From Pocillopora damicornis (taxonomy: Eukaryota): a stretch of 64,000 nt of DNA. Positions within the stretch are counted from its first letter, which is position 1, and every line of letters starts with the position of its first letter. Below the pieces are notes generated by a model, which made no database searches, was not told where the DNA came from, and was given only the letters and a program-made list of their open reading frames with translations. The stretch spans positions 1 through 64,000 of the forward strand of contig NW_020845457.1 in assembly GCF_003704095.1 (NCBI RefSeq), read 5' to 3'. Of the stretch, positions 5,752-10,560 are shown piece by piece. Both the position numbers and the translations under genes were made by a program.

Positions 5752-6072
5752 GTATTTATCTTCATTTAACAGCTCACATCGAAGATTTCCTTCTGAATTT
5801 GGAGATGAGGCGACGTTTAACGAAGAACATGGCGGATTTTCCACACAATTGATAGCACACTCTCTGTAGCTGCTCACGACAATCGATAAACCAACTGATA
5901 CCTGAAGACGATGGAACTTGTCAGCTGCAAAGTTGCCATACGATACCTTTTTTTCTTGGAAATAAACTCCTCGCCTTAGGCCAGCTCTTCCATCCAGTTT
6001 AAATTCGCTTTGTTCAGCTTTCATATCAGAAAGCAGAACCAAAAAGTGATAACAAATGATAAATTTAAACAT
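5752..6072 (-). CDS. Gap-truncated exon 1 (signal peptide + PAN/Apple domain), family copy A
   Basis: MFKFIICYHFLVLLS...RECAINCVENPPCSSLNVASS...[10 protein letters not shown] shows PAN-type C-x3-C-x5-C...C spacing; runs into an N gap. Confidence 0.75.
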
Positions 6073-6871: not shown

Positions 6872-9800
6872 TTATTGCACCAAGATGTATCCCATAGCTC
6901 TGATTTGAGCGCCACCATTTCCGCATGTATTGCTGTCTTCATGTAACCCTCCCGTACCAAATCCGATTCTGCTATCACAAGTGTAGCAGTCGTTCTCATT
7001 GTTACCAAGAATACCAATTCTAGCTTTGCCGAAATCAGAATTACCGCTGACCACATTGAATCCTTCCCTGTCACAATTAGGTAGTAACGAAGCCTGTGCA
7101 CCGATAAGCGATAACCATGCGCTACGGCCCAATGATGTGGGGCGATGAGTTCCGTCAGCAATCAGTGAATACAATGAACTGGCCTGCTCGGTTAGCACTA
7201 TGAATTGTTTTTGCTGATCGATCTTCATTCCGAGACAAATCTTGTGGAAGGGCGTGTTCCAATAGGTTCGTAACTTGGTCTCTTGCGAGTCGAACCCAGT
7301 CTCTCCTCCAGCAAGGTTGTACTCATTTGCGAGGTTCCAGTATGAAGAGTGAAAGTGAAAAGTTTGCTTAAAAAGAAACAAAATGAAAGAAAAGCATTAA
7401 AAAAAATACAACAATGGAAAAAAAAAGCAGACGAAAACAAGCAAACAAAAAAACAAACAAACAAAAACCAAAAAAAAGGGAGGAAAAGAGGTGTTTTAGT
7501 TAACGATCGAAGGGGCAAAGTATATGCTTGATTTGCCGGCTTGTTATGAAAAGAAAAATGGGCAAGGTTCGCTATAAATCGTTCGGAAACAAAGTTGAAC
7601 TTCAACCTCCATATTATTAGCTAATACAGTGTACTTGCGATAATCAAGCTCAAAGTTTACTCTCTTGTTGTTTAATTTGCACGCACAAGACGCCATCAAC
7701 AATGCTGATCTTAGCAGTGTGTAGCATGCGCTTTGCATATGAACCTAGTTATCATCTAGCTTACCACTGAGGTCTCTGTAATTCACCGGTTCCTTTAGAG
7801 GAAATTCTACCCCGGCCAGGGGTAATAAAATGAATAACATCTTTCTTTGTGCAGCTTACCTTATTACCATCCATTTTTATAACTGTTGTCCAGCCACCAC
7901 TGCCACACCCAAAATCCCCCATGTGACAGTACACAGAGGTCAGTTGTCCTCCAACGAAGAGTGAATATCGTTGACTGGAAGCATTTGACCTTTGAAAAAG
8001 GAGAACTCAGTCAAAGAATCAAATCAGGGCAGAACATGAGTATGCTTATCCAGTAACGATCTATGGTTTAGTTCTGTTGCTTCCCAGACCACCAGTTTTT
8101 TAAATCGCAATTTGTTTTTGTTTTAGCGAGACATTTCAGTGTGGAAAAAAAATCCGTTCTATGTCTTTTACATGAAAACTCATAACCAAACTCACCCAGA
8201 TCATCACGTTCTTCCATGAAAGTTTTAAAAAAGGCATCAAATTGTAAAATGGTAAAAGGATGCAACTTAATGACTTACCGAGAAAGGTACACGTCGTTGC
8301 ATGAGCGTAATGCTGAAAGCAATAAAAATAGTTTTTCAGTCATTAGGTTTAAACAAAAAATTAAAACATCCAAATATTCACAATAGATTTGTGCCAGGGT
8401 TATATATTTTGAGTTGCATAAATCCTTATTTCTTCAGCCTCAATTTATTNNNNNNNNNNNNNNNNNNNNNNNNNNNNNNNNNNNNNNNNNNNNNNNNNNN
8501 NNNNNNNNNNNNNNNNNNNNNNNNNNNNNNNNNNNNNNNNNNNNNNNNNNNNNNNNNNNNNNNNNNNNNNNNNNNNNNNNNNNNNNNNNNNNNNNNNNNN
8601 NNNNNNNNNNNNNNNNNNNNNNNNNNNNNNNNNNNNNNNNNNNNNNNNNNNNNNNNNNNNNNNNNNNNNNNNNNNNNNNNNNNNNNNNNNNNNNNNNNNN
8701 NNNNNNNNNNNNNNNNNNNNNNNNNNNNNNNNNNNNNNNNNNNNNNNNNNNNNNNNNNNNNNNNNNNNNNNNNNNNNNNNNNNNNNNNNNNNNNNNNNNN
8801 NNNNNNNNNNNNNNNNNNNNNNNNNNNNNNNNNNNNNNNNNNNNNNNNNNNNNNNNNNNNNNNNNNNNNNNNNNNNNNNNNNNNNNNNNNNNNNNNNNNN
8901 NNNNNNNNNNNNNNNNNNNNNNNNNNNNNNNNNNNNNNNNNNNNNNNNNNNNNNNNNNNNNNNNNNNNNNNNNNNNNNNNNNNNNNNNNNNNNNNNNNNN
9001 NNNNNNNNNNNNNNNNNNNNTTGCTAAGGAATTACGTAAACAGAGTGAGTGCATGAGTAAGAGGCAGCGCAACCTGTTGCTAAGCTTTGCGTTTGTGCGG
9101 GTAAAAATAGCGGACATTCGTTGATGTCTGTTCGGAGAAAGATTTTTGGAAATGATGAGATAAGAGCAGCTGGTTCATCGATAATGTAGTTAAGTAATAG
9201 ACATCGTTTCAGAAAGAGATGAAAACGAAATCAGTTCACACAATTTTAAACATCAGCTCTTTTAGCAAATGGTATATTACATTGCTTTTTACAATATCCT
9301 TGCTTGAGAAAATAATATATAATATATATATAAAATATATAATATATATATAAAATATATAATATATATATAAATATATATAACTGCAGACAGTACTGTT
9401 TTGGCCTTCTGGGCCTCATCAGTGCAATGCTGACGCTAAGATGGAGGTAAGGCAATATAACAACCCCAAGTGATCTCACATATGTGGGATCATCTAAGCC
9501 ATGCCAGAGTGGTCAAACTAGAAAAACTAGTGAGCATGCACAATGCTAGCAGCAATGACTCATCCTAGTAGAGTGCTCAATTTGGACATGAAAGCAAAGC
9601 TTTGTATGCCAAAGAGCTATATCTAACTATATATATATATATATATATATTTATTACCTGTTTACCAGTAAAACAAATTATGATAGTTTTTTGACCAATC
9701 AGACTGCGCTTGTATCTCAGTTACCGTATGATGTAATCCATGCAAATGTTAACTAGAGGTGGTAGAGGAAGTAGACACTCACCAGTTTGACAGCGAACTC

Positions 9801-10502
9801 CATTGTATCCAGGCTGACAGTTACAAACATATCCATTAACCCGATCAACGCACGTCCCTCCGTTTAGACAGGGATTACTGGAACATTCGTTGATATCTGC
9901 AATAAAAGATAGCAGACTCTGGGATGGCCTTGACCGAGCTTTTGGTTGATACGTTGATAATCTTTCAGTCATTAGGTTTAAACAAAAAAAATAAAACATC
10001 CAAATATTCAATAGATTTGTGCCGGGGTGATATTTTGAGTTAAATCCTTATTCCTTCAGCTTCAATTCGTTCTGCGACATTGCTAAGGAATTACGTAAAC
10101 AGAGTGAGTGCATGAATAAGAGGCAGCGCAACCCGTTGCTAAGCTTTGCGTTTGTACGGGTAAAAATGGCGGACATTCGTTGATGTCTGTTCGGAGAAAG
10201 ATTTTCGGAAATGGCGAGATAAGAGCAGCTGGTTCATCGATAATGTAGTTAAGTAATAGACAGCGTTTCAGATAGAGATGAAAAGGAAATCAGTTCACGC
10301 AATTTATTTCAAATTGCACGAGAAAAATTATGTGATTACGTATTAATAACATACATGAAAAAATACGAGTTAGCCTATCATTATTATGCAGAAGCAAAGC
10401 GCGCATCAAGTGCAAAAATAATTTATTCAAACCCTGCAAGTGACATCGTGCGTTCGGTTAAAACAACCGCGTAAGATCAAAAAATATATATATATATATA
10501 TA

Positions 10503-10560
<58 letters not shown>

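What the first reader, a model, noticed from the sequence alone, without database searches (positions are those of the whole stretch)
9381..9628. Retrozyme-like unit with a type I hammerhead ribozyme, in sense orientation inside an intron, with its catalytic G12 mutated
Seen on the minus strand: stem I AUUGCA/UGCAGU, core CUGAUGA (9422-9416), stem II GGCC-CAGAA-GGCC, AAAA instead of GAAA (9402), palindromic stem III CAGUACUG, and a GUC site (cut after 9389). The block has TAACT at both ends 243 nt apart and sits between TA microsatellites. Joining the ends extends stem I (AGC/GCU beyond a UAGAUAUA bulge), as expected for a unit-length copy of a circular or tandem RNA. Known: metazoan non-LTR retrozymes are short type I hammerhead repeats that give circRNAs and are thought to be mobilised by Penelope-like elements; short palindromic stem III favours dimeric cleavage; G12 is the general base. 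Inference: this is a member of a coral retrozyme family whose copy is disarmed (a CpG-type transition), which would spare the host pre-mRNA from self-cleavage.
Basis: partly seen in the sequence, partly recalled or inferred. Interest (0 to 1): 0.82.

Follow-up and report, generated by a model that had tools for sequence, protein, structure and literature searches.

The report
Dead copy of known coral retrozyme
This is one decayed, single-unit copy of the hammerhead-ribozyme "retrozyme" repeat already described and tested in the coral Acropora millepora. It sits in an intron and was switched off by an ordinary CpG mutation, so it is real but ordinary.

Summary
Window 9428-9383 (minus strand) is a type I hammerhead with A in place of the general base G12 at 9402. 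It lies in a 243-nt unit (9628-9381) flanked by TA microsatellites.

The unit belongs to a dispersed family: the assembly holds 52 hammerheads within 3 mismatches, and 33 are identical to the GAAA consensus. By eye it is homologous along its length to the published Acropora millepora retrozyme clone Amil224, which self-cleaves and gives circular RNA (PMC7229834). The kind is therefore already known.

Family copies share one 3' end, are variably 5'-truncated, and mostly sit in (TA)n. A few carry part of an upstream unit. This points to target-primed reverse transcription, probably by Penelope-like elements, which also end in (TA)n here. One such element is fused directly to a retrozyme 3' part.

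The copy is sense-intronic, 154 nt downstream of the donor site of an EGF exon in a PAN/EGF gene.

"Disarmed to spare the host" is unsupported. G12 is the G of the unit's only CpG, the same change recurs in other copies, and this copy is already 4% diverged. Neutral decay suffices.

Two unverified first-reader notes report hammerhead elements elsewhere in this genome.

The parts
9381..9628 (-). One full unit (243 nt plus the 5-nt AGTTA overlap) of the coral non-LTR retrozyme family
   Evidence: At least 42 genomic matches at 80-96% identity. It differs from the majority consensus at 10 of 248 positions. By eye it is homologous to the published clone Amil224.
9383..9428 (-). Type I hammerhead ribozyme motif with stems I, II and III and the cleavage site GUC (cut after 9389)
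   Evidence: Read directly from the sequence. 52 genomic copies within 3 mismatches against 0 for the control. Sub-threshold matches to the Rfam hammerhead clan.
9402..9402 (-). G12-to-A substitution in the catalytic core. It is the G of the only CpG in the family consensus.
   Evidence: 27 of 30 aligned copies have G here. 49 of 52 hammerheads have G here. G12A slows full-length hammerheads about 10^5- to 10^6-fold (PMC2553840).
9629..9652 (.). (TA)n microsatellite next to the 5' end of the unit
   Evidence: Read. 25 of 31 family copies have (TA) of 4 or more repeats within 25 nt upstream.
9312..9380 (.). Imperfect TA-rich microsatellite next to the 3' end of the unit (tail or target)
   Evidence: Read. 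26 of 30 copies with an intact 3' end have (TA) of 4 or more repeats within 25 nt downstream.
9783..9896 (-). Upstream EGF-domain exon of the host gene: 114 nt, phase 1-1, acceptor ...ttgcag|AT, donor CTG|GTGAGT
   Evidence: Pfam EGF E=2.5e-11. Splice sites read.
11687..12169 (-). First coding block of the host gene (signal-peptide-like N-terminus plus PAN domain)
   Evidence: ORF found. Pfam PAN_1 E=7.7e-05.
6875..7934 (-). Downstream coding blocks of the same gene (ORF blocks 7764-7934 and 6875-7381), which close the intron holding the retrozyme
   Evidence: ORFs found. The same block order recurs in the paralogues at 16878-23255. A donor-like AAG|GTAAGC was read.
8450..9020 (.). Run of N in the same intron. 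It was left as it is.

Best explanation
Window 9628-9381 (minus strand) is a single-unit daughter copy of the stony-coral non-LTR retrozyme. This is a roughly 243-nt non-coding repeat whose 3' part is a canonical type I hammerhead.

Shown here:
- It belongs to a family of about 50 copies with an intact GAAA consensus.
- It is homologous to the A. millepora retrozyme that has been tested experimentally.
- Family copies share a fixed 3' end, ...GUC|UGCAGUUAG(UUA) followed by (TA)n. They have variable 5' truncation and usually sit inside TA microsatellites.
- This copy lies in sense orientation in an intron of a PAN/EGF gene.
- It has A at catalytic position 12.

Inferred:
- Copies are made by target-primed reverse transcription at nicked (TA)n. 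The enzyme is probably the reverse transcriptase plus GIY-YIG endonuclease of a Penelope-like element.
- The RNA template was not cut at its own 3' hammerhead, because the inserted 3' end lies 9-12 nt beyond the cleavage site.
- G12A arose as a neutral CpG transition after insertion.
- It makes this hammerhead effectively inert (about 10^5-fold slower).
- With only one ribozyme at the locus, no circular RNA could be released here even before the mutation.
For: Motif and coordinates.

Family size and consensus.

Flanks, truncation points and partial tandems.
- 26 of 30 copies have (TA)n at the 3' side and 25 of 31 at the 5' side.
- 5' ends cluster at unit positions 1-7 (14 copies) and 85-103 (11 copies).
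- L003 holds 1.5 units.
- L007 and L008 carry 11 nt of an upstream unit.

Homology to the published clone: Amil224 in the supplement of PMC7229834. The hammerhead is identical except loop 2 (AGAAA against CAGAA). The published 225/245-nt size variants match the 243-nt unit.

Penelope-like elements with the same target:
- L039, L045 and L043 encode RVT_1 plus GIY-YIG.
- A CxxC-x4-CxxC linker precedes the endonuclease.
- Their tails end in (TA)n.
- Other minimal-hammerhead repeats also end in (TA)n.
- In L039 the element lacks its last 7 nt and its tail, and is fused directly to retrozyme positions 128-248.
- In L043 the element and a retrozyme lie tail to tail in one microsatellite.

CpG: the consensus has a single CpG, at C11.1/G12. 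The same G-to-A change is seen at C1759 and C629.

Effect of G12A: PMC2553840.

Gene context.

RNA: contigs from four RNA-seq studies carry consensus-type family sequence. They do not cover the intron flanks of this locus.
Against: - No Rfam hammerhead model reaches its gathering score.
- No compensatory base-pair changes are available, because the copies are too alike.
- No intact tandem dimer, which would be needed to excise a circle, was found in this assembly. The only in-register dimer, at C1759, has G12A in both units.
- No back-joined contigs were seen, so circular RNA is not shown for this species.
- The retrozyme does not share its 3'-terminal sequence with the one Penelope-like family examined. 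The partner is therefore not identified.
- The fused copy is a single case.
- Expression of the host gene was not seen: exon 1 had zero depth, and contigs over the EGF exon were about 90% identical, so they come from paralogues.
Confidence: 0.85

Rival explanations
1. Adaptive disarmament. An active hammerhead in sense orientation would cut the host pre-mRNA within the intron and lower mRNA output. Selection therefore favoured the G12A allele at this locus.
For: The copy is sense-intronic, 154 nt after the donor site. G12A nearly abolishes cleavage. A 2026 preprint reports a modest depletion of retrozymes from introns in Xenopus.
Against: G12 sits on the unit's only CpG, which is the most mutable site. 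The same change recurs at C1759 and C629. The copy carries nine other substitutions, so it is not young. About a fifth of all 52 hammerheads have core changes. Expression of the host gene was not detected. One locus cannot show selection.
Confidence: 0.08
2. A SINE-like element mobilised by a LINE (or another non-Penelope reverse transcriptase) that happens to carry a hammerhead.
For: 5' truncation and a simple-repeat tail are also typical of LINE-dependent SINEs.
Against: There is no internal pol III promoter-like or tRNA-like head and no shared LINE 3' end. (TA)n targeting and partial upstream tandem copies are hallmarks of Penelope-like elements (PMC8557442). Penelope-like elements with (TA)n tails coexist here, and one is fused to a retrozyme.
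Confidence: 0.07
3. A chance hammerhead-like motif in unique intronic sequence.
For: Rfam scores are below threshold.
Against: There are 52 copies against 0 in the control. The unit is homologous along its length to a ribozyme-bearing repeat that has been tested experimentally.
Confidence: 0

Closest known systems
Acropora millepora non-LTR retrozyme (clone Amil224; 225 and 245 nt variants), Cervera and de la Pena 2020, PMC7229834
   Same: - The same repeat: it aligns by eye along the whole unit.
- The hammerhead has identical stems I, II and III, core, and GUC|UGCAGUUAGAUAUAGC junction.
- The unit size matches (243 nt against about 245).
- GC content is low (46%).
- It is non-coding.
- The RNA is predicted to be highly self-paired.
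   Different: - Loop 2 is CAGAA, not AGAAA.
- In this assembly the family is small (about 50 hammerheads against about 1,500). It consists almost entirely of single or 5'-truncated units in (TA)n, not arrays of up to 62 units.
- This copy has G12A.
- Circular RNA is not shown here.
Penelope-like elements with minimal type I hammerheads in their pseudo-LTRs (Cervera and de la Pena 2014; Craig et al. 2021, PMC8557442)
   Same: Insertion into (TA)n, 5' truncation, partial head-to-tail upstream copies, and a hammerhead near the 3' end.
   Different: The unit encodes nothing. Its hammerhead is the canonical form with full-size helices, and lies 9-12 nt from the 3' end as opposed to about 55-60 nt. 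Its 3' end is not the same sequence as that of the Penelope-like family examined here.
Schistosoma Sm-alpha and newt satellite 2 hammerhead repeats (recalled from my own knowledge, not tested here)
   Same: Short non-coding repeats with type I hammerheads. Sm-alpha is dispersed and SINE-like.
   Different: No sequence relationship was tested. Newt hammerheads need dimers, whereas the coral one does not.
Conserved intronic hammerheads of amniotes (Rfam HH9/HH10)
   Same: A type I hammerhead in sense orientation in an intron. HH9 is the best Rfam match for intact copies, at 25 bits.
   Different: Those are single-copy and conserved across species at orthologous sites. This is a decaying repeat copy, and its score is far below the gathering score of 52.

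Membership tests
Metazoan non-LTR retrozyme (coral family) | Sequence homology to the described coral retrozyme monomer | tested here: met
   I compared the family consensus by eye with clone Amil224 printed in the supplement of PMC7229834. The hammerhead and the junction are identical except loop 2, and the rest aligns with small indels.
Metazoan non-LTR retrozyme (coral family) | Short non-coding unit (about 170-400 nt) with GC below 50% | tested here: met
   The unit is 243 nt with GC 0.46. The only ORF across it is a 77-aa ORF running into TA-repeat translation.
Metazoan non-LTR retrozyme (coral family) | Head-to-tail tandem units, so that two ribozymes flank a monomer | tested here: not met
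   This locus has one unit. In the assembly only C1759 has two hammerheads 243 nt apart, and both carry G12A. The family junction is nevertheless documented there.
Metazoan non-LTR retrozyme (coral family) | Expressed as linear and circular RNA of unit length | tested here: inconclusive
   Contigs of four RNA-seq studies carry consensus-type family sequence. They are short (about 100 nt) and show no back-joints, and contigs cannot show ends.
Hammerhead ribozyme, type I | Conserved core CUGANGA ... GAAA ... UH | tested here: not met
   This copy has AAAA at 9402-9399. The family consensus and 33 of 52 copies have the full core.
Hammerhead ribozyme, type I | Three helices around the core, with helix I open | tested here: met
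   Helix I is 6 bp including one G-U. Helix II is 4 bp with a 5-nt loop. Helix III is 3 bp with a GUAC loop. The unconstrained minimum-energy fold of the isolated 60-mer is not this fold (z = -0.36).
Hammerhead ribozyme, type I | Reaches an Rfam gathering score (RF00163, RF02275, RF00008) | tested here: not met
   This copy scores 21.2 bits and intact copies about 25-26 bits, against cut-offs of 48.5-52. The genome-wide RF00163 scan was uninformative.
Hammerhead ribozyme, type I | Self-cleavage | not testable with these tools
   The nearly identical A. millepora ribozyme cleaves at about 0.8 per min. G12A variants of other hammerheads are 10^5- to 10^6-fold slower.
Penelope-like element (autonomous) | ORF with reverse transcriptase and GIY-YIG endonuclease | tested here: not met
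   The unit has no such ORF. The domains are found in separate elements L039, L045 and L043.

The most novel reading that the evidence does not exclude
The coral retrozyme is copied by a (TA)n-targeting Penelope-like element of the zinc-finger-linker (Neptune-like) type. The template would be an RNA cut at its 5' side but not at its own 3' hammerhead. The C1396 fusion, in which a Penelope-like element lacking its last 7 nt is joined directly to retrozyme positions 128-248, would then be a template-switch footprint of one reverse transcriptase using both RNAs. In addition, because the catalytic G12 lies on the unit's only CpG, gene-body methylation would act as a built-in, context-dependent off-switch for inserted ribozymes.
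Probability: 0.2. Interest if true: 0.5.

Novelty: already known. Interest (0 to 1): 0.27.

Why it matters
The element itself belongs to a published and experimentally characterised coral retrozyme family.

Three details are modestly useful:
- The shared 3' end, the (TA)n targets, the 5' truncations and one fusion with a Penelope-like element add genomic support in a cnidarian for the view that animal retrozymes ride on Penelope-like elements.
- The inserted 3' end lies beyond the cleavage site, which means the copied RNA was not cleaved at its 3' ribozyme.
- The general base sits on the only CpG. This gives a simple, testable reason why old or methylated copies lose activity.

Tried and rejected
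- **Rfam over the window at gathering threshold.** It found nothing. The whole-genome RF00163 search scored only 73 of about 31,500 candidates, and nothing rang in the control genomes either, so it says nothing.
- **A shared 3' end between the retrozyme and an autonomous Penelope-like element.** The apparent case, L039, is not one. Sister copies L045 and L043 end at ...ccattgtgcaaat(TA)n without the retrozyme module, so L039 is a fusion. The fusion junction is unique in the genome. The element's normal tail occurs about five times.
- **L038 (C2336).** The two inverted hammerhead hits lie inside a larger inverted duplication with no long ORF. I did not pursue it.
Those loci (C49, C1915, C2202:401963, C2611, C2671, C3096, C4317) were not inspected.
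- **RNA evidence.** Only Logan contigs were available. They showed no back-joints and did not cover host exon 1. Contigs over the EGF exon were about 90% identical, so they come from paralogues. Neither circular RNA nor splicing of this gene could be shown.
- **Enrichment of core mutations in sense-intronic copies.** This was not testable without gene annotation of the roughly 50 loci.
- **Alignment with the published clone.** The comparison was by eye.
- **Spliced gene model.** Exons were searched singly by reference, and the joined model was not built.
Full report
**1. Observation**

The minus strand of 9440-9381 reads as a textbook type I hammerhead.
- Stem I 5' strand: AUUGCA, 9428-9423.
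- Core: CUGAUGA, 9422-9416.
- Stem II: GGCC / CAGAA / GGCC, 9415-9403.
- AAAA at 9402-9399.
- Stem III: A-C-A / GUAC / U-G-U, 9399-9390.
- C17 at 9389, with the cut after 9389.
- Stem I 3' strand: UGCAGU, 9388-9383.

AGTTA stands at 9628-9624 and at 9385-9381, 243 nt apart. TA microsatellites flank both ends.

Rfam does not call the motif. There is nothing at gathering level in the window. The best clan match is Hammerhead_3 at 21.2 bits against 48.5. Intact sister copies reach about 25 bits on Hammerhead_HH9 against 52.

**2. It is a repeat family with an intact consensus**

The 248-mer has at least 42 matches in the same genome, mostly at 90-96% identity. The 34-nt hammerhead occurs 52 times within 3 mismatches, against 0 for the reversed control. 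Of these, 33 are identical to a consensus with GAAA. Only the window copy and the two units at C1759 have A at position 12. One copy has the complementary CpG change (GGCTGAAAC).

Roughly a fifth of the 52 carry some change at an invariant core position. The genome also holds several other hammerhead families: 157 matches to a generic pattern against 14 in the control.

**3. It is the published coral retrozyme**

The supplement of Cervera and de la Pena 2020 (PMC7229834) prints the cloned A. millepora genomic retrozyme Amil224. By eye it aligns with the consensus of this family along the whole unit. The stretch ...CAGCACTGCACTGATGAGGCC...GGCCGAAACAGTACTGTCTGCAGTTAGATATAGCTCTTTGG is identical apart from loop 2 (AGAAA against CAGAA).

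That paper reports the following:
- unit variants of about 225 and 245 nt;
- efficient self-cleavage of a monomer clone (about 0.8 per min);
- abundant linear and circular RNA in coral tissue;
- similar repeats in other stony corals.

The kind of element is therefore already known and tested. Stem III is identical in the clone that cleaves as a monomer.

The consensus unit is predicted to fold into a stable, highly paired structure. As a circle it gives -73.5 kcal/mol, z about -3.4 against mononucleotide shuffles.

**4. How copies were made**

I extracted 31 copies with their flanks.
- All copies with an intact 3' part end at the same place...GTC|TGCAGTTA(G)(TTA), followed by (TA)n. 26 of 30 have four or more TA repeats within 25 nt.
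- 25 of 31 also have (TA)n just upstream.
- 5' ends vary. 14 copies start at unit positions 1-7, 11 start at 85-103, and the rest are scattered.
- L003 (C1759) has 1.5 units head to tail. L007 and L008 carry 11 nt of an upstream unit (gtactgtctgc) before position 1.

A fixed 3' end, variable 5' truncation, a simple-repeat tail and partial upstream tandems are the signature of target-primed reverse transcription. They are also described for endonuclease-bearing Penelope-like elements, several clades of which prefer (TA)n (PMC8557442).

The inserted 3' end lies 9-12 nt beyond the cleavage site. From this I infer that the copied RNA had not been cut at its own 3' hammerhead.

The pile-ups of 5' ends could have either of two causes, and I could not separate them. 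One is an RNA 5' end made by an upstream hammerhead, since several copies start with (T)GC-AGTTAG. The other is microhomology between TA-like stretches of the cDNA (positions 7-11 and 84-88) and the target.

**5. Penelope-like elements in this genome**

A GIY-YIG scan found its best hit 400 nt upstream of an exact retrozyme hammerhead at C1396. That locus, L039, encodes a reverse-transcriptase fragment (RVT_1, E=7.6e-07) and a GIY-YIG domain (E=3.5e-08). A CxxC-x4-CxxC linker precedes the endonuclease. This is a Penelope-like element, and the copy is 5'-truncated and frameshifted.

Two sister copies, L045 (95% identity) and L043 (91%), show where this element really ends. It has its own minimal hammerhead, then about 60 nt, then ...ccattgtgcaaat(TA)n.

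In L039 the last 7 nt and the TA tail are missing. The element runs straight into retrozyme positions 128-248 and then (TA)n. This junction is unique in the genome. It is what a template switch from retrozyme RNA to the element's RNA during one reverse-transcription event would leave. It is a single case, however, and a later deletion could also produce it.

In L043 the element and a diverged retrozyme lie tail to tail in one TA/TG microsatellite. Two other minimal-hammerhead repeat families also end in (TA)n.

The retrozyme therefore shares target and insertion style with resident Penelope-like elements, but not the 3'-terminal sequence of the one family examined. The partner is not identified. 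A 2026 preprint reaches the general conclusion, that retrozymes derive from Penelope-like elements, for vertebrates. It also notes evenly dispersed monomer copies.

**6. Gene context**

The following coding blocks lie on the minus strand.
- A signal-peptide-like plus PAN block at 12169-11687 (PAN_1, E=7.7e-05).
- An EGF exon at 9896-9783 (EGF, E=2.5e-11). It is 114 nt, phase 1-1, with acceptor ttgcag|AT and donor CTG|GTGAGT.
- Two further ORF blocks at 7934-7764 and 7381-6875.

The same order of blocks recurs in paralogues further along the window. This agrees with another first-reader note on a PAN/EGF/USOMP5-like gene array.

The retrozyme starts 154 nt downstream of the donor site, on the same strand, so "sense, intronic" holds on gene-structure grounds.

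Transcript proof is lacking. In four RNA-seq contig sets exon 1 had no cover. Contigs over the EGF exon differed by about 10%, so they come from paralogues. A run of N at 8450-9020 lies in the same intron and was left untouched.

**7. The G12A change**

The family consensus contains exactly one CpG in 248 nt, and it is C11.1/G12. The window copy differs from the consensus at 10 positions (4.0%), one of which is this G-to-A. With ten hits on 248 sites and about 13 invariant core sites, a core hit is expected in roughly four copies in ten, even without CpG hypermutability.

The same G-to-A is seen in both units at C1759 and in the old, 80%-identical copy at C629. The minimal hammerhead of the Penelope-like copy in L039 shows the same kind of change: GCCAAAAC against GCCGAAAC in its sisters.

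G12A slows a full-length hammerhead about 10^5- to 10^6-fold, to about 0.0001 per min (PMC2553840). The ribozyme here is therefore effectively dead. Nothing requires selection for this. The idea that it spares the host pre-mRNA remains an untested possibility with low prior odds.

**8. RNA**

Runs from ten studies hold part of the unit. Contigs from four RNA libraries in four studies were laid on 9160-12200.
- They cover 9364-9669 but not the intron on either side.
- At 9434, 9460, 9462 and 9512 they carry the family-consensus letters, not the window's. They therefore come from other copies.
- No back-joint was reported.

This is compatible with expression of the family. It does not show circles, and contigs from RNA libraries cannot exclude DNA carry-over.

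**9. Verdict**

The element is an ordinary decayed monomer of a published retrozyme family. The adaptive reading is unsupported.

Three details are incremental: (TA)n targeting with an uncleaved 3' ribozyme in the template, one fusion with a Penelope-like element, and the catalytic G on the only CpG. They are worth a note but do not amount to a new kind of system.

Two other unverified first-reader notes on this genome also report hammerhead elements.

Noticed in passing
L039:1083-2944 (G000:C1396:20303-22164), minus strand: A 5'-truncated Penelope-like element (reverse transcriptase plus GIY-YIG) lacks its last 7 nt and its TA tail. It is fused directly to retrozyme positions 128-248 followed by (TA)n. 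The junction is unique in the genome. It may be a template-switch product.
   Followed up: partly
L039:1230-1262, compared with the same stretch in L045 and L043: This Penelope-like family has its own minimal hammerhead (cccCTGAGGAAGGCAAATGCCGAAACGCGTCggg) about 60 nt from its 3' end. In L039 it too has G12-to-A at a CpG (GCCAAAAC).
   Followed up: no
L031-L036 (for example L033:6996-7181, L034:7113-7177): Two abundant minimal-hammerhead repeat families (CTGATGAGTGAGTAATCACGAAAC and CTGATGAGTGGGCAACCACGAAAC) end about 55 nt downstream in (TA)n. They are often found as inverted pairs. No long ORF was seen in the 10-kb loci fetched.
   Followed up: partly
L043:925-1100 and 1100-2013 (G000:C3662): A diverged retrozyme copy (75% identity, A6-to-G in the core) and a Penelope-like copy lie tail to tail in one TA/TG microsatellite.
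   Followed up: partly
window 10282-11097: Intron 1 of the host gene contains other repeats. RNA-library contigs from all four runs cover them at high summed depth, with many consensus-type differences.
   Followed up: no
window 10048-10176 and 9021-9117 (minus strand): Nearly the same short ORF ([30 protein letters not shown]) occurs in both introns flanking the EGF exon. A second EGF-like block lies at 11216-11103. This suggests an internal duplication of an EGF exon together with its intron segment.
   Followed up: no
window 13906-14569: A PAN block of a neighbouring paralogue is split into three pieces with shifted frames, so this array member is probably decayed.
   Followed up: no
L038:2259-2354 and 5872-5963 (G000:C2336): Short retrozyme-derived fragments (positions 22-57 joined to 200-248) with mutated cores lie inside a larger inverted duplication about 3.5 kb apart.
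   Followed up: partly
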